From positions 1 through 63,609 of the forward strand of contig CALSCP010001258.1 of assembly GCA_943704425.1 (NCBI GenBank): DNA of 63,609 nt, given 5' to 3'. Below the pieces are notes generated by a model, which had not been told where the DNA came from, searched no databases, and worked only from the letters and a program-made list of their open reading frames with translations. The position numbers and the translations under genes were made by a program. Each line of letters begins with the position of its first letter. The first letter of the stretch is position 1. Source of the DNA: Ministeria vibrans ATCC 50519 (taxonomy: Eukaryota; Protista; Filasterea). Below, piece by piece: positions 1,089 through 56,221 of the stretch.

Positions 1089-1677
1089 CGAGTGAGTGTT
1101 GTGACAGCTGTGTGCAAACAGAGTGTTGTAGTGGGTGCGTGAGGAGTGTAGAAGAGAGAGAGGGTGTGCGTGTGTGCGTGTGTGTGTGCGAGGGAGTGTG
1201 GTGACAGCCTGTGTGCAAACAGAGTAATTGAACTGATTGTGAGAAGACTAAGGGCGGTACCTTGCCGAGACTTGCGTCGAATACGGGGGTCCGTGGACTG
1301 GCGAGGCGCAGCAGTTTGTAGGGCGACAGGTCGAAGCCGGCGGGCCCAACAATCTCAACACCCTCGTTGTTGTCGTCGCCCGGATCGGCGTAGTGCAGCT
1401 CGTTGATCCAAATGGGCAGCGCCGTGGGTCTGTCGCTGTTGCGGGTGCCGCCGTTGAAGCAGTCGAGGCTATTTGCGGGCCCACAGCTCGAGTGCACGAG
1501 CGGAGTGGTCGACAGGACGGACACCACACACATCCAAAAGAACACACCTAGCGGGGCGCTGTTAGGGATCGCAGCGAACACACACACAGAGACAAGAGGA
1601 ATGACAGCCGGTTGCGGCCAAACAGCGGGCAACACTGCGGTGAGGAAGCGAACAACGACCGCTTGTGGGAATCCCAT
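1..1677 (-). CDS. Secreted/membrane protein with lamin-tail-like domains (LTD) and EGF repeats; 3' end runs off the window
   Basis: Exon 1 is 1677-1261 (hydrophobic N-terminus, CFNGGT, WINELHYADPGDDNNEGVEIVGPAGFDLS). Exon 2 is 786-67 (SLQLKGVGVSYADFTWTGP, CSCPAGWTGSVC, EGF IDDCASNPCVHSGTCVDGHFSYTCVCPVGFAGVHC, and the start of a second LTD, FFSELSY...FFELTGPGDIDLS). Splice sites are GT-AG. Confidence 0.8.
1008..1090. repeat. (GT)n/(GTGTGC)n microsatellite in intron
   Basis: Seen directly in the sequence. Confidence 0.95.
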
Positions 1678-2194
1678 TGTGGTATTCTTATCGTTTCTTA
1701 AATAATTATGCGAACTCGTGCTGTGAGCGCACAGACACGCAGAGAGAGGGAGGGAGACGGGGAACGGTCGGCAAGAGCAAGAGGGAGTACTAGCACAGTG
1801 TCGCCGACGACTGGAGCGGCGTGGCTGGTCGACAGCCAAAGTGAGTGTGAACGTTATTATTTCATCAAAATAGTACAGAGTTGGAAAGAACCCAAAGAGC
1901 GCTGTTTTCGACAGTCTCCATGCCGAAAAGCAAATGAAACAAAAGCACACATGTGACCTGCGGTGTTTGGAGGGAAGCTCGTACCCATCTTGTGTGTGTT
2001 GGAAAGCGAAAAACGCCAATGGACGGAGAGTGGCGACTCGCAGGGCGTTCAGTGGTGTTCCCAAGCACCCAGAGGCCAGAGCAATGTGGATAGCCCAAAG
2101 AAAGAGGCGAAACAAAAGACTTGACTCGGTGTTCACTTTTGCGATCATAGATATGAGACGACAATTGATCACACACACAACTTTTGTTTTCACA

Positions 2195-3000
2195 ATGGAG
2201 GACGAACGGCGTCGGTTGATCCCGCTGATGGTGATCGGGGGAACGCTTGCGGCGGTGTACATTGGGTTCTACCCGTTTGCGTCGGTGGTGCTGCACAAGC
2301 ACTCACTGCCCTTCGTGCCCGCCAACCCCAGACAGATCCGCCGTGTCCTGGGCCTGATGAAACGCCGCGGGCCGCTGCTGGACATTGGCTCTGGCGATGG
2401 GAGAGTGGTCATTGCGGCTGCGAAGGAGCAGGTGAGAGAGACTTGATCGTTCGCCAAAACGTCTTTCACACGACTGGCACAGGAGCGTCGAGGCGTCGGC
2501 GTCGAAATCAACATATGGCTTGTGTTGTGGGCGCGTCTTCAGGCGCTGCGCCACGGCGTGTCGAAACGCACCAGCTTCATCAAGACAGATTTATGGAAGG
2601 TTCCTTCTTTGATGATCAGTTGCACTGTCGTCTCATTGTCATCATTCGTTGCAGTACGACATTCGGGGCTACAAGACAATTGTCGTCTTTGGCGTGCCTG
2701 AAATGATGGACGATCTTACAGACAAGTTAATACGAGAAATGGATCAGGATGCTGAGGTAGGCAGAGAGAGAGAGAGAGGACACGATAGTGCACCTTTCAA
2801 TCGAATCGTTGCAGGTGATTGCCTGTCGATTTCCACTTGCGCACAAGTGGAAGCCAGCTGAGGCACTACCAGACTCGGCAGGCACACAGGGACTCCATGG
2901 CGTGTGGCGGTATGTGAGCAAACGGCCCGATATGTTCGCAAAGACGGCAAAAGGCACACAAGAAGATCGGGACCAGAGCGAGGGACGGAGAAGTGTATAA
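2195..3000 (+). CDS. FAM173B: FAM173-family mitochondrial lysine methyltransferase (ATPSCKMT/ANTKMT-like), 4 exons
   Basis: N-terminal TM segment, LPFVPA, LLDIGSGDGRVVIAAA, GVEINIWLV, IVVFGVPEMM, VIACRFPL and VWRY motifs typical of FAM173A/B. Paralog assignment is uncertain. Confidence 0.88.
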
Positions 3001-3120
3001 GATTTCAATTTCATTTGTAAGGAAAATATGTTTGCAAAGACGGCAAGAGGCACACCCGAAAATCGGGACCAGATCGAGGGACGGAGAAGTGTATAAGATT
3101 CAATTTCATTTGTAAGGAAA
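2930..3120 (+). repeat. Tandem duplication (~96 bp x2) of the FAM173 last codons and 3' flank
   Basis: Copies at 2930-3025 and 3026-3120 differ by a few substitutions and one indel. Confidence 0.95.
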
Positions 3121-3122
3121 AC

Positions 3123-5106
3123 TCAGGCGGGATCATTGCACTGTGCGCCCACACAGGAACGAAGAAAGTCAAGGCGCTTGCGGTAGTGGGAGACTCGCTC
3201 GGAGGGAAGAGACGAAAGGGTGTTGTTGAGCTGGTACGGATCGGAGTGCATGTCAAAGAACTCTGTGTGGTAGAATGTGTTGGTCTTCTTGTCGTCTACA
3301 GCGCAGTGTGTCAGCCAATCAATCAATCAATTGTAAATGAGTGTCAGCGGTGAGTGTGTTTGATGAAGAATCAAATGAGTGTTTTTTTTTAGTGTACCCC
3401 ATGTTCTGTAGTAGTCACAGAAGATTGAGTTTTCGTCGTCGTTGAGAGTGCGCACGCACGACCAAGTGTTGTTAACGCTGTCCTGCCACCAAAAAAAGGG
3501 ACCTACAGATACACACGGAGAGTGAGTGACTACATCTCTCGTTCTCTCTCTCTCTGACCTCCAGTGTAGAAAGGGGGAGTGGAGAAGGAGTTGTTTCCAA
3601 TGTGGGTGGGCGCATCCTGACCCCAGTACTCGGTGAGACAGTCCTTGCGAGGTGGAGAGTCGGGCGGGGACATAGCAGGATGAAGGGCGGACGCAAAGGA
3701 GCGGCCGTCAAAGGATGGGGGCAAGGGAGAGACGCCGGCAAGGTCAAGAAGGGTTGGAGCAATGTCGATGTTCTGAGTGATGAGAGGGGAGCGACGGGGA
3801 ACGGACGAAGCGTGAGGGGTGCGCACGTACAGCGGCAGACGAATGTTCTCCTCGTATGGCAGTCGCTTGTCGTACGGCATCGCAAAGTTCCCCAGATGGT
3901 ACCCGTTGTCGCCCGTGTAAATACTACGCAGTGCAAAAGAAGGTGTAAGCCGACGGAAGAGTGAGTCTCTATAAAAAAAAGGGTGTACATGTATGTGTTG
4001 TCAAGTGCGTTATGTTTGCGCAGGAGCTCCACCACATCCTCCACCATGTCGTCGACGGATTGCAGCACTTGAAGGCGACGCCGGAACGTCAGGTCGCTGT
4101 AGTTAATCTCAGATTCGTTCATGGTGCCTTGTTCCCACACAAGCCAGTGCTTTCCTTTGGTCGCTGTGTTCCAGTTGGGTGTGCGAGGTGCCTTGGCGTC
4201 CGGGAACAGCGTGGAGTACTGCGGGGCGGGATCGTTGGGGCCGTGACAGGCGGGTGAGGAGAGCATCGCAAAGAGTGGCGTGTCGGGACTGTTGCTGAGC
4301 TGCGAGTCGATCCACGACAGCGACGTGTTCTTGACCAGGTCGGTGAAGTAGTCGTGCTCGTAGTCGTGTCCGTGTTGCACAGTTTTGCCATTCATCGACA
4401 CAGCATAGTCGTAGTACCGCGAGTTGCCCTGCAGACCCACCCAGTGGTCCCAGCCGGCCGGGACATGCTCAAGACCGCCCACTGCACAACCACAAACAAA
4501 CAGTTTGGTGTTGTTGGTCGCACCGCAAAACCACACAAAGACACAAAAGGGCCCGGGGCGCGTGTATTACCTTTGGGGTTGCCGTACGCGTTGAGGTACT
4601 TGCCGGCAAAGCTTGTAGCGTAGCCGGCGTGCTTGAGAAAGACAGACATTGTCGAGTTGGCTTCAATGCGACGCTGCCAGTCGTCGCTGGAGCAGCCGTC
4701 GGGGATGCCGTTCTGGTACGTGCGCGTGTTGTGCTGGAAGCGCCCGCTCAGGAACGACGCGCGGCTCGGGCAGCAGATGGGAGTGGCGACGATCATATTG
4801 CTAAGAGAGAGTGTGTGGTTGTCACGTCGCACTCTCCTCCTTCCCCTCCCCTCCTCCACTCAACACGTACTCAAACACCACGCCGTGGTCGCCCCCCAGC
4901 AGACGCGTCGTCTTGGGCATGTAGTCCATTGAGCCCAGCGTCAAATCCTGATCATCAGTGAGCCTAACGCGAACGGAGAGAGAGACAGGTTGAAATTGGT
5001 GTGTGTTATGGTTTGGGTTGCGATACACAAAAATCAAATGAGGCTTGGCAGGAGCAGCAAGCGCACCAGCAATGCCAAGCAATACAAACAAGGAGTAGAG
5101 GTGCAT
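3123..5106 (-). CDS. GNS: N-acetylglucosamine-6-sulfatase, multi-exon
   Basis: Signal peptide, LTDDQD, sulfatase signature CCPSRASFLSG, GKYLNAY, PAGWDHWVGLQGNSRYYDY, RRLQVLQSVDD, DKRLPYE, NIDIAPT, DPYQLNN. Confidence 0.93.
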
Positions 5107-46204: not shown

Positions 46205-50824
<4,620 letters not shown>

Positions 50825-51416: not shown

Positions 51417-54497
<3,081 letters not shown>

Positions 54498-54580
54498 GTA
54501 AGAGAGAGAGGAACAAATAGAGAGAGGAGGGAGGGAGAAAGAATAAATAGAGAGAGGAGGGAGAATAAATAAATAAATAA

Positions 54581-54810
<230 letters not shown>

Positions 54811-54837
54811 TGTCAATAAACTTGTTGCAAAGAACAG

Positions 54838-54860
54838 TAGGGTTAGGGTTAGGGTTAGGG
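54838..54860 (+). repeat. Interstitial (TTAGGG)~4 telomere-like repeat
   Basis: TAGGGTTAGGGTTAGGGTTAGGG. Confidence 0.8.
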
Positions 54861-54892
54861 TCACGCTTGTCATTAGGGTAAGGGGTTCTGAC

Positions 54893-56221
54893 CTGAAGAC
54901 GACAGTGACAAGAGTCTTTGCGACCAAACGCATTGCGCATTGAAAGCAACAGTCCTCCACTGTTCAAAAGTGCAATCTAAACACAAATCAAAAAGGGAAG
55001 GTAAGATTAAATAGTTGTGCACACTGGTATTATAATAATTATTATGCAAACCTGTGACTCATTGGGCTCAGTTGTGACTTCGTTTCCAACGACCTTTGCC
55101 GACACAGTCCATGTGACGCCATTGTCATCACTCGCTATAATCGCACTCCCTATTATATACAAAACACAAGATGAGATCGTTTTGGGTGAGTTGCGTTACG
55201 CGGGCGTGAAATTGTTGATTAGAACAAAAAACTGGAAGATCGATGACCTGGGGCGTTTGCACTGTCAAGCGGCTCAAACCAGCCGGCAACCACCAGACGA
55301 CCGCCGGCCGTCACAACGCCAGTGCCGGGCCCTGGACAGTACTCGCGGATTCCACCGGCGACGGGGACTGAGGTGATATTGACGGGCGCTGACCAGGTTA
55401 CTCCTGCAGAAGAGAATGTTTATCCTATCATGAGCAGTTGTTTGTGTACCGTTGTCGTTGGATGTGATGTAGAAGAGTCCTGTAATGTGGCATTTGTGTG
55501 CACACTCAGTGTAGTGCACAATGATGGTCTTTGTCTTGGGAATGTACGTAGCTGCGCCCAAATTTATTCCGTCGTAGTCTGGATCGCTGAGAGGATCAGA
55601 CACAAGAAAGCGAATGTCTTCCCAGGTTGCACCGCCGTCGGCCGAGCGGCGTTGCGCAAGATGCTTGGGTCCGGCATCGGAGCCAGAGTAGACGCGCGCC
55701 TCGGCGAACGAGATGAGGAGATCCGGCGCACTTGACGAGTCTGCGGGAACTGTCAACAAGAGAGGGATGCGGTACTCGTGCACGCCCGACGTGTTGAACG
55801 GGTACACGACGGTCTTGGTGACGTTGTACTCGCAGCTGGCAATGATGTCAAGAATCTCCGCGTTGTGTGTGCAGTAGGCGCTGCCGGTGGTGTAGTGCGA
55901 GCGGTCTGGGGTGAGACTCGACGGCGAGTAGCAGCGCCACTGTGCCGGACTGCGCTGGGCATCGGTGTCGTCGCGCGCCACGAGGGGCGTGGCATAGCCG
56001 CCTGTGGCCATGGTCTCAAGGCACGCTGGCGGAGAAGGACGAGGGGGCGCGGGAGAACGGTTGAGAGGAACAATTGCGTGTATGGGTTAGTGCCTACAGG
56101 CGATTTCCGGTACGGTCTTGTTGTTGCACCAGGCGTCTGCGAGGGCCTGACAGCGCGCTGGGGGGACATCTGCAGCACTGGAGAGAGCAAGAAATACCGC
56201 AAGGAAGACGATTTGGATCAT
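54893..56221 (-). CDS. GH33 sialidase (NEU1-like) with signal peptide and N-terminal MAR-like module; 3' part missing
   Basis: YRIP motif, SFAEAR, Asp boxes SADGGATW, SNDNGVTW and SDDNGVTW, GPGTG, LLLSMRN. Confidence 0.88.

What the first reader, a model, noticed from the sequence alone, without database searches (positions are those of the whole stretch)
55830..56170. MAR-like sialic-acid-binding module fused to a GH33 sialidase outside Apicomplexa
After the signal peptide comes CQALADAWCN...C...PLVARDDTDAQRSPAQWRCYSPSSL...YCTHNAEILDIIASC. The L(V/Y)AR.D......(Q/E)WRCY....L pattern and the helix-C...T...L..I...C layout recall the microneme adhesive repeat of Toxoplasma MIC1/Eimeria MIC3, a sialic-acid lectin usually described as coccidian. 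Here it sits directly before a sialidase catalytic domain (YRIP, Asp boxes). Inference: the MAR fold acts as a carbohydrate-binding module of a secreted sialidase, a possible ancestral context for the parasite adhesin.
Basis: partly seen in the sequence, partly recalled or inferred. Interest (0 to 1): 0.8.

Follow-up and report, generated by a model that had tools for sequence, protein, structure and literature searches.

The report
MAR-like lectin module on protist sialidase
A secreted sialidase gene of a free-living, animal-related protist starts with a small cysteine-rich module that is a true relative of the sialic-acid-binding MAR domain, until now described only in coccidian parasite adhesins.

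Summary
On the minus strand, about 54.89-56.22 kb, lies an intron-containing gene with three parts: a signal peptide, an ~85-residue six-cysteine module, and a NEU1-type GH33 sialidase.

Evidence that the module is a MAR relative:
- An 8-sequence module profile finds only T. gondii MIC1 (E 2.3e-7) and E. tenella MIC3 (E 2.8e-4) in the PDB.
- The same profile retrieves Eimeria MIC3 proteins from 1.84 billion representatives (E 6e-14 and 2e-18).
- AlphaFold models of an intron-free homologue and of the window's own exon-2 part match only MAR structures (Z 8.1-8.6; next best 2.8).
- hhalign places the module's Y-C-T on the H-L-T sialic-acid motif of EtMIC3.

It is a reduced MAR. The C5-C7 cysteine knot is missing, and the window sequence scores below Pfam's cut-off.

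The module-sialidase fusion occurs in choanoflagellates, diplonemids and many environmental protists. The module also precedes GT29 sialyltransferases, esterases and other enzymes. This fits a carbohydrate-binding module, but binding itself is untested.

The gene's 3' end lies on another contig, so the apparent truncation is an assembly break at a GA microsatellite. The scan's first stage noted the same resemblance on another piece of this genome (s1-761940), probably the paralogue on contig C932.

The parts
56098..56221 (-). Exon 1: start codon, signal peptide (about 56221-56174), and the first helix of the module with Cys1 and Cys2 (C-x7-WCNN). It ends with 1 nt of a Ser codon.
   Evidence: Translation. 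Module profile A4 positions 1-24 match 56090-56164 at E 0.023. Orthologue alignment. The signal peptide is called by inspection only.
56026..56097 (-). Intron 1 (72 nt, GT..AG), just before the third cysteine of the module.
   Evidence: Junction sequence. The acceptor was fixed by alignment to orthologues P0125 and P0179. The M. brevicollis homologue has an intron at the equivalent spot.
55450..56025 (-). Exon 2: the rest of the module (Cys3..Cys6) and the first ~115 residues of the sialidase catalytic domain.
55832..56152 (-). MAR-like module, from the first to the last cysteine codon, interrupted by intron 1. Six Cys; helix, two-strand hairpin (LVAR / WRCY), short strand (YCT), C-terminal helix.
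   Evidence: AF2 model of the exon-2 part: pLDDT 89.7. The Foldseek top 5 are all MAR structures. Family-level model: pLDDT 93.3, Z 8.1-8.6 to MIC1/MIC3. Profile hits.
55928..55939 (-). WRCY: invariant core strand of the module. Its Cys corresponds to Cys4 of coccidian MARs.
   Evidence: HMMER and hhalign alignments to TgMIC1 (WRCF, WRCY) and EtMIC3 (WRCY). R and C are invariant, and W and Y nearly so (229 each), in 234 module copies.
55868..55876 (-). Y-C-T: the position equivalent to the H-x-T sialic-acid-binding motif, directly before the last helix.
   Evidence: hhalign puts module Y-C-T-R on EtMIC3 H-L-T-R (same). The role of the motif is taken from PMC3192848 and PMC5646145. The position is Thr in 163 and Ser in 45 of 209 copies.
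55763..55774 (-). YRIP: the sialidase (F/Y)RIP motif with the first catalytic arginine.
   Evidence: Aligned to FRIP of NEU1 (8du5) and YRIP of bacterial sialidases.
55622..55645 (-). First Asp box (SADGGATW). The putative acid/base Asp lies in SGSDAG at 55678-55676.
   Evidence: Alignment to NEU1: SASDEGAK...RRSTDQGSTW.
55248..55403 (-). Exon 3 (..VTWSAPVN..PGPGTGV..). Intron 2 is 55404-55449.
55052..55149 (-). Exon 4 (SDDNGVTW Asp box, ..PNESQ).
54893..54976 (-). Exon 5 (..SMRNA..CHCRLQ), the last sialidase exon present in the window, followed by a GT donor.
54497..54892 (.). Start of intron 5 with CCCTAA repeats and a long GA/CT microsatellite: an assembly break. The remaining exons (SFSNDDG.. 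to the stop) are on contig C159 (L015, about 1498-1840, +), directly after an N gap and the same microsatellite.
   Evidence: Orthologue P0125 residues 43-372 map to the window and 374-480 map to L015 at 43-45% identity, against 27% for the other sialidase locus L014.

Best explanation
The window encodes the 5' two-thirds of a secreted, or food-vacuole/lysosome-targeted, NEU1-type GH33 exo-sialidase. Its mature N-terminus is a reduced member of the MAR (microneme adhesive repeat) superfamily. The module most likely works as a carbohydrate-binding module. It would hold sialic acid, or a related nonulosonic acid, on a glycoconjugate through the conserved Thr of its Y-C-T motif, with Tyr replacing the stacking His. 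That would keep the catalytic beta-propeller on polyvalent substrates such as prey surfaces or mucin-like glycans. Shown here: homology and fold of the module, the domain order, conservation of the Thr position, conservation of the sialidase catalytic motifs, and a wide distribution of the fusion outside Apicomplexa. Inferred: ligand binding and its specificity, the cellular location, and the disulfide pairing (C1-C4 and C2-C3 as in type I MAR, plus a new YCT-to-last-Cys pair).
For: Homology:
- Pfam MAR_sialic_bdg is the best family for the window and matches 23 of 41 homologues, covering profile positions 2-63 from the first Cys.
- phmmer of a single module hits TgMIC1 at E 9.8e-6, matching both MAR1 and MAR2.
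- The 8-sequence profile hits TgMIC1 at 2.3e-7 and EtMIC3 at 2.8e-4, with no other PDB hit at E<=10.
- The same profile against 1.84 billion representatives gives 456 hits at E<=1e-3. These include E. praecox microneme protein (2.2e-18) and E. tenella MIC3 (6.1e-14).
- hhalign to 2LBO: probability 89.7%, E 1.8e-6, 72 columns.

Fold:
- The model has pLDDT 93.3.
- Foldseek ranks 1-5 are all MAR entries, followed by a drop to TM 0.2.
- VIA gives Z 8.6 and 8.5, rmsd 2.6-3.2 A over 79 of 84 residues.
- In an independent scan of 48,161 chains only 2lbo (8.5) and 2jh1 (8.1) exceed Z 2.8.
- The window's own exon-2 fragment gives the same top 5.

Binding motif:
- YCT(R) aligns to HLT(R).
- In Eimeria the Thr is essential and the His is replaceable (VxT binds; a natural YLT exists in EtMIC3 repeat 1).

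Carbohydrate-binding-module behaviour:
- Pro-rich linkers separate the module from the enzyme in many homologues.
- The module is N-terminal in sialidase-bearing representatives (median start at residue 23). Of 50 representatives of 350 aa or more, 30 carry a sialidase.
- It is also fused to GT29 sialyltransferase, PAE/NOTUM-like and GDSL esterases and O-FucT, and it occurs in tandem arrays.

Enzyme:
- Best PDB relative is NEU1 8du5 (exon 2 E 1e-14; orthologue P0125 E 5e-42, aligned through the nucleophile Tyr).
Against: - No binding data exist for any member.
- The window's module scores 14.7 bits against Pfam's 25.1-bit cut-off. The split by an intron lowers that score.
- The 17-residue Cys-knot segment (C5-C7) of coccidian MARs is absent, so the pocket may differ.
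- The His of HxT is Tyr. The LxxY contact of EtMIC3 type I MARs is not present.
- About 22% of family members have Ser in place of Thr, and HxS variants did not bind in Eimeria.
- Partner domains include enzymes with no obvious link to sialic acid (O-FucT, 2OG oxygenase, ShK/EGF), so the ligand may be broader or different.
- The Thr alignment rests on hhalign and HMMER, not on superposed coordinates.
Confidence: 0.68

Rival explanations
1. The module is a genuine MAR relative but not a sialic-acid lectin. It would be a general cysteine-rich adaptor, used for another glycan, for protein-protein contact, for sorting or for oligomerisation, that marine protists attach to many secreted enzymes.
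For: Partners include O-FucT, DUF3431, 2OG-Fe(II) oxygenase, ShK and EGF modules and PAE esterases. The C5-C7 knot is missing and His is replaced by Tyr. Many coccidian MARs with variant motifs do not bind sialic acid.
Against: The most frequent partner by far is a sialidase, in two different sialidase clades. A sialyltransferase is also a partner. The one residue shown to be essential in Eimeria, the Thr, is kept in 78% of copies, with flanking Y/F-C and R.
Confidence: 0.22
2. The module is an intramolecular chaperone or pro-domain of the sialidase, for example replacing NEU1's dependence on cathepsin A, and is removed or inert in the mature enzyme.
For: It occupies the position of NEU1's N-terminal region. 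Animal NEU1 needs a partner for folding and activity (background knowledge, not tested here).
Against: The same module occurs on unrelated enzymes, alone, and in tandem arrays of 2-4 copies. That pattern fits a binding module, not a dedicated pro-domain. Flexible Pro-rich linkers are common.
Confidence: 0.06
3. The resemblance to MAR is convergent or due to chance, or the gene is contamination or a recent transfer from a coccidian.
For: Pfam scores are below threshold, and the Foldseek E-values alone are weak (4e-3 to 0.17).
Against: Reciprocal profile searches are highly significant and specific. Four cysteines and the ARxD / WRCY / L pattern align residue for residue. The gene has short spliceosomal introns like its neighbours, and one intron position is shared with M. 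brevicollis. There are 456 cluster representatives across distant eukaryotes.
Confidence: 0.03

Closest known systems
Coccidian MAR domains (T. gondii MIC1 MAR1/MAR2, PDB 2JH1/3F5A; E. tenella MIC3 MAR1b, PDB 2LBO; Pfam PF10564)
   Same: Homologous sequence and fold. N-terminal helix with Cys1. The type-I-style extra Cys pair after the helix. The (V/Y)AR-x-D strand, the WRC(Y/F) strand with Cys4, and the conserved Leu. An x-x-T-R motif directly before the C-terminal helix, at the position of the H-x-T sialic-acid motif.
   Different: About 85 residues instead of about 105. The 17-residue segment carrying Cys5-Cys7 is absent. The motif is Y-C-T, whose Cys probably pairs with the last Cys. There is no LxxY. 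It is a single copy fused to an enzyme rather than tandem repeats in a micronemal adhesin. It occurs in free-living non-apicomplexan protists and scores below Pfam's gathering score.
Animal lysosomal sialidase NEU1 (PDB 8DU5), GH33
   Same: The catalytic domain is the closest solved relative (exon 2 E 1e-14; orthologue E 5e-42). RIP motif, SxSDxGxK, Asp boxes, PGPG, ExQ, xRN, CxCR and the nucleophile Tyr are all aligned.
   Different: NEU1 has no lectin module. Here a MAR-like module follows the signal peptide.
Bacterial sialidases with a sialic-acid-binding CBM40 lectin domain (e.g. Vibrio cholerae, Clostridium perfringens NanJ, Streptococcus pneumoniae NanA); background knowledge
   Same: Same design logic: a sialic-acid-binding module N-terminal to a GH33 propeller, raising activity on polyvalent substrates.
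   Different: CBM40 is a beta-sandwich unrelated to the small disulfide-rich alpha/beta MAR fold. The full-library structural search shows no notable match apart from the MAR structures.
The second eukaryotic sialidase clade (CIRIP / AECR..GDGC type) of choanoflagellates and diplonemids, e.g. S. rosetta PTSG_04204 and M. brevicollis MONBRDRAFT_28502
   Same: Same module at the same N-terminal position. The genome's paralogue on C932 belongs near this clade.
   Different: A different sialidase clade from the window's NEU1-like gene (98* split). These proteins are annotated only as sialidase or hypothetical, with no MAR annotation.

Membership tests
MAR (microneme adhesive repeat) domain, Pfam PF10564 | Score at or above Pfam's gathering cut-off (25.1 bits) | tested here: not met
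   Window exon 2 scores 14.7 bits, E 0.034. Homologues score 12.6-21.5 bits. Some environmental module proteins pass (P0113 53.4 bits, P0114 35.1 bits).
MAR (microneme adhesive repeat) domain, Pfam PF10564 | Significant sequence homology to bona fide MARs by reciprocal profile search | tested here: met
   Module profile: TgMIC1 2.3e-7 and EtMIC3 2.8e-4, the only PDB hits. E. praecox microneme protein 2.2e-18 and EtMIC3 6.1e-14 among 1.84 billion proteins. hhalign E 1.8e-6.
MAR (microneme adhesive repeat) domain, Pfam PF10564 | MAR fold (distorted beta-barrel/sheet flanked by helices) | tested here: met
   Z 8.6 (3f5a), 8.5 (2lbo) and 8.1 (2jh1) over 79 of 84 residues; the next fold scores Z 2.8. 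The window's own fragment gives the same top hits. These are predicted models, not experimental structures.
MAR (microneme adhesive repeat) domain, Pfam PF10564 | Three conserved disulfides C1-C4, C5-C7, C6-C8 (plus C2-C3 in type I) (PMC3192848) | tested here: not met
   C1, C2, C3 and C4 align. The segment with C5-C7 is deleted (17-residue gap). Two other Cys (in YCT and at the helix end) are present instead. The pairing was not checked on coordinates.
MAR (microneme adhesive repeat) domain, Pfam PF10564 | H-x-T sialic-acid motif with the essential Thr | tested here: inconclusive
   Thr is conserved and aligned (Y-C-T on H-L-T). His is replaced by Tyr. In Eimeria, VxT binds, HxS and YxE do not, and the natural YLT was not tested.
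MAR (microneme adhesive repeat) domain, Pfam PF10564 | Binds sialylated glycans | not testable with these tools
   Needs a glycan array, NMR or crystallography.
GH33 exo-sialidase, NEU1 type | (F/Y)RIP motif and Asp-box repeats on a six-bladed propeller | tested here: met
   YRIP at 55774-55763. Asp boxes in exons 2, 2/3 and 4, and on L015. Pfam BNR_2 is found in the homologues.
GH33 exo-sialidase, NEU1 type | Catalytic Arg triad, acid/base Asp, Glu and nucleophile Tyr | tested here: met
   By alignment of exon 2 and of orthologue P0125 to NEU1 8du5, and of the window/L015 exons to P0125. Motifs RIP, SDAG, ESQ, MRN, SRINGT, AYS and YEQ are present. The last four motifs' exons are partly on contig C159.
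GH33 exo-sialidase, NEU1 type | Complete open gene | tested here: inconclusive
   The window holds exons 1-5 only. The matching 3' exons lie on C159 after an N gap and microsatellite. Continuity is not proven.
CBM40 (bacterial sialidase lectin domain) | Beta-sandwich lectin fold | tested here: not met
   In the scan of 48,161 chains, only the two MAR structures score above Z 2.8. The analogy is functional only.

The most novel reading that the evidence does not exclude
The MAR fold did not arise in coccidia. It is an old eukaryotic carbohydrate-binding module for sialic or nonulosonic acids. It was attached to both ancient sialidase clades and to sialyltransferases and esterases of phagotrophic protists (holozoans, diplonemids, cryptophyte and picozoan relatives). 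Coccidian micronemal adhesins would then be exapted, tandemly multiplied copies that gained an extra cysteine knot. This would define a new CBM family and give the origin of a parasite invasion lectin.
Probability: 0.4. Interest if true: 0.78.

Novelty: new variant of a known kind. Interest (0 to 1): 0.66.

Why it matters
The literature held here describes the MAR domain as restricted to coccidial parasites (PMC5646145). None of the papers that mention it co-mention choanoflagellates, diplonemids, cryptophytes, stramenopiles or chromerids.

Showing that a reduced MAR heads sialidases and other sugar-processing enzymes of free-living protists has three consequences:
- It gives a testable origin for a host-invasion lectin.
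- It suggests a new eukaryotic CBM family for sialic or nonulosonic acids.
- It annotates a conserved but unlabelled N-terminal region in public proteins such as S. rosetta PTSG_04204 and M. brevicollis MONBRDRAFT_28502.

It also bears on how phagotrophs digest sialylated prey surfaces. Sialidases are top markers of the phagotrophic lifestyle in MAST stramenopiles (PMC8163842).

Tried and rejected
- Searching the genome with Pfam PF10564 found nothing, and its controls were also silent, so the result is uninformative.
- phmmer of the P0003 module alone gave only a spurious histone hit.
- The ESM Atlas gave no usable hit.
- My first splice model put the intron-1 acceptor at 56003/56002 and the third Cys in exon 1. 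It was wrong, and orthologue alignment corrected it.
- I first took the host for a choanoflagellate, from the best named hits and a shared intron position. The tree places neither of the genome's two genes inside the choanoflagellate clade. A NOC3 search gave only ~30% hits to fungi, animals and plants.
- 'Truncated gene' was rejected in favour of an assembly break.
- Chance, convergence and contamination were rejected (see the rivals).
- I could not superpose coordinates, so disulfide pairing and pocket geometry remain unchecked.

Full report
**1. What is in the sequence.**

The window is eukaryotic nuclear DNA with short GT..AG introns, microsatellites and about 51% GC. The gene lies on the minus strand.

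- Exon 1 (56221..56098) encodes a hydrophobic signal peptide and then C-x7-WCNN.
- A 72-nt intron follows (56097..56026).
- Exon 2 (56025..55450) continues with C-LETM.., PLVARDD.., WRCY, YCT and a helix ending in Cys. It then runs straight into a sialidase: YRIP, FAEAR, SGSDAG and the first Asp box.
- Exons 3-5 (55403..55248, 55149..55052, 54976..54893) carry further Asp boxes, PGPGTG, ESQ, MRN and CHCR.

My first intron-1 acceptor was wrong. Alignment to two ~54%-identical environmental orthologues (P0125, P0179) showed that the third cysteine belongs to exon 2. The complete module was folded from an intron-free homologue instead.

**2. The gene is not truncated; the assembly is broken.**

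After exon 5 come CCCTAA repeats and a long GA microsatellite (54497-54892), and then a convergent kinase gene. Orthologue P0125 maps with residues 43-372 on the window. Residues 374-480 map on contig C159 (L015, about 1498-1840), immediately after an N gap flanked by the same GA/CT repeat. Identity there is 43-45%, against 27% for another sialidase locus, L014. The C159 exons carry the remaining motifs: SxDDG, PVCQGS, SRINGT, AYS and YEQ.

**3. The enzyme.**

Exon 2 is most similar to lysosomal NEU1 (8du5, E 1e-14). The full-length orthologue P0125 aligns to NEU1 at E 5e-42, through the nucleophile Tyr.

In a tree of 51 sequences the window gene falls in a NEU1-like clade of environmental sequences (95-98* support). 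The genome's second module-bearing sialidase (contig C932, complete, two exons) falls with the CIRIP/AECR..GDGC clade, which also holds the choanoflagellate and diplonemid proteins. This fits the published inference of two ancient eukaryotic sialidases (PMC5811610).

**4. The module is a MAR relative: sequence evidence.**

- Pfam MAR_sialic_bdg is the top hit of window exon 2, but below threshold (14.7 against 25.1 bits).
- It matches 23 of 41 homologues (best E 2.3e-4). The matches cover profile positions 2-63 starting at the first Cys.
- One module alone (L005) finds TgMIC1 as the only significant PDB sequence (E 9.8e-6, both MAR1 and MAR2).
- An 8-sequence module-only profile (A4, all rows by reference) finds TgMIC1 (2.3e-7) and EtMIC3 (2.8e-4), and nothing else at E<=10.
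- Against 1.84 billion representatives the profile has 456 hits at E<=1e-3 and 196 at E<=1e-10. They include E. praecox microneme protein (2.2e-18, 6 repeats) and E. tenella MIC3 (6.1e-14, 7 repeats).
- hhalign against the 2LBO chain gives 89.7% probability and E 1.8e-6 over 72 columns.

**5. The module is a MAR relative: fold evidence.**

- The AF2 model of the intron-free module of P0003 (84 aa) has pLDDT 93.3 and pTM 0.82. Its order is helix, two strands, a short strand, helix.
- Foldseek ranks 1-5 are 2lbo and four MIC1 entries (probability 0.93-1.0, TMq 0.59-0.64). The next hits have TM about 0.2.
- VIA-align gives Z 8.6 and 8.5, rmsd 2.6-3.2 A over 79 of 84 residues.
- An independent scan of 48,161 chains gives 2lbo 8.5 and 2jh1 8.1, with the next at 2.8.
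- The window's own exon-2 part (76 aa, lacking helix 1) folds with pLDDT 89.7 and again has only MAR structures in its top five.

**6. How it differs from coccidian MARs.**

- Cys1-Cys4 align, including the type-I-style pair after helix 1.
- A 17-residue segment holding Cys5-Cys7 is absent.
- The motif before the last helix is Y-C-T-R where EtMIC3 has H-L-T-R.

According to PMC3192848 and PMC5646145, the Thr binds the sialic-acid carboxylate and is essential. The His can be replaced: VxT binds, and EtMIC3 repeat 1 is naturally YLT. HxS variants did not bind.

Across 234 module copies the motif position is Y 170 / F 30, C 209, T 163 / S 45, R 161. The window has Y-C-T-H.

**7. Distribution and partners.**

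The module-sialidase fusion is present in these groups:
- Choanoflagellates: S. rosetta, M. brevicollis, S. urceolata, Choanoeca flexa, Didymoeca, Savillea and Stephanoeca.
- Diplonemids: Diplonema ambulator, D. japonicum, Flectonema, Namystynia and Artemidia.
- Many unnamed marine sequences.

Module proteins also occur in Guillardia theta and in a picozoan single-cell genome. Of the 150 best representatives, 54 carry a sialidase, and 30 of the 50 that are 350 aa or longer do so. The module is N-terminal in these.

Other partners are GT29 sialyltransferase, PAE/NOTUM-like and GDSL esterases, O-FucT, DUF3431, 2OG oxygenase and ShK/EGF. Tandem arrays of 2-4 modules exist. Pro-rich linkers often separate the module from the enzyme. 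This is how carbohydrate-binding modules behave. The sialidase and sialyltransferase partners point to sialic acid, but the other partners leave room for a broader ligand.

**8. The host organism.**

- A NOC3 orthologue in the window has its best named hits in fungi, an animal and plants, at about 30% identity.
- The window also encodes an LRR-C2-WW(x3) protein.
- Neither sialidase gene nests within the choanoflagellates.
- Earlier notes of this scan name the genome Ministeria vibrans, a filasterean. I did not test that.

Whatever the species, the named family members establish that the module exists outside Apicomplexa.

**9. Novelty.**

The literature held here calls MAR 'restricted to coccidial parasites'. 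I found no paper linking MAR to sialidases of protists or to the taxa above. The public homologues carry no precomputed MAR annotation. M. brevicollis NEU1-like genes were surveyed in 2012, and the passages my term search returned do not mention this module.

The design, a lectin module plus a GH33 domain, is well known in bacteria (CBM40). I therefore rate this a new variant of a known kind. Binding itself remains to be shown.

Noticed in passing
window 54497-54893, and L015 (G000:C159) about 1300-1480: The sialidase gene and a convergent kinase gene both stop at one GA microsatellite. The sialidase 3' exons lie on contig C159 right after an N gap flanked by GA/CT repeats. This looks like a mis-join or collapse in the assembly, not a biological truncation.
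   Followed up: yes
window 54838-54880: Interstitial CCCTAA (TTAGGG) repeats lie inside intron 5 of the sialidase gene, next to the microsatellite.
   Followed up: no
L002 (G000:C932), minus strand, about 2040-655: A complete second sialidase with the same MAR-like module (motif YCTRD, two exons, intron before WRCY). It belongs to the other sialidase clade (CIRIP type). This is probably the locus noted by another first-stage reader (s1-761940).
   Followed up: yes
L014 (G000:C2358), minus strand, about 2220-1490: The C-terminal half of a third, more divergent sialidase, again preceded by a GA/CT microsatellite. Its 5' part, and whether it has a module, were not examined.
   Followed up: partly
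P0173, and other members of alignment A5 (environmental proteins): The same module heads GT29 sialyltransferases (2), PAE/NOTUM-like esterases (3), O-FucT (2), DUF3431 (3), a GDSL esterase, and ShK/EGF-containing proteins. One large subgroup has the signature GC(D/E)xxLNAWCxxNCPH.
   Followed up: partly
P0113 (764 aa, metagenome), P0134 (Picozoa SAG22), P0225 (Guillardia theta GUITHDRAFT_138750), P0114: Non-apicomplexan proteins with 1-4 tandem modules and no sialidase. P0113 and P0114 pass Pfam's MAR cut-off.
   Followed up: partly
L006 (M. brevicollis CH991567.1), 1501-4009: The M. brevicollis homologue has an intron immediately before the module's third cysteine, the same place as intron 1 of the window gene. 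It has two further introns inside the module.
   Followed up: partly
window 48347-50821 (-): One long ORF combines LRR repeats, a C2 domain and three WW domains (NEDD4-like N-terminal half with an LRR extension).
   Followed up: no
G000:C1992:24237-24344 (+), L020: A weak extra match of the module profile (E 0.87, positions 22-57). It was not examined.
   Followed up: no
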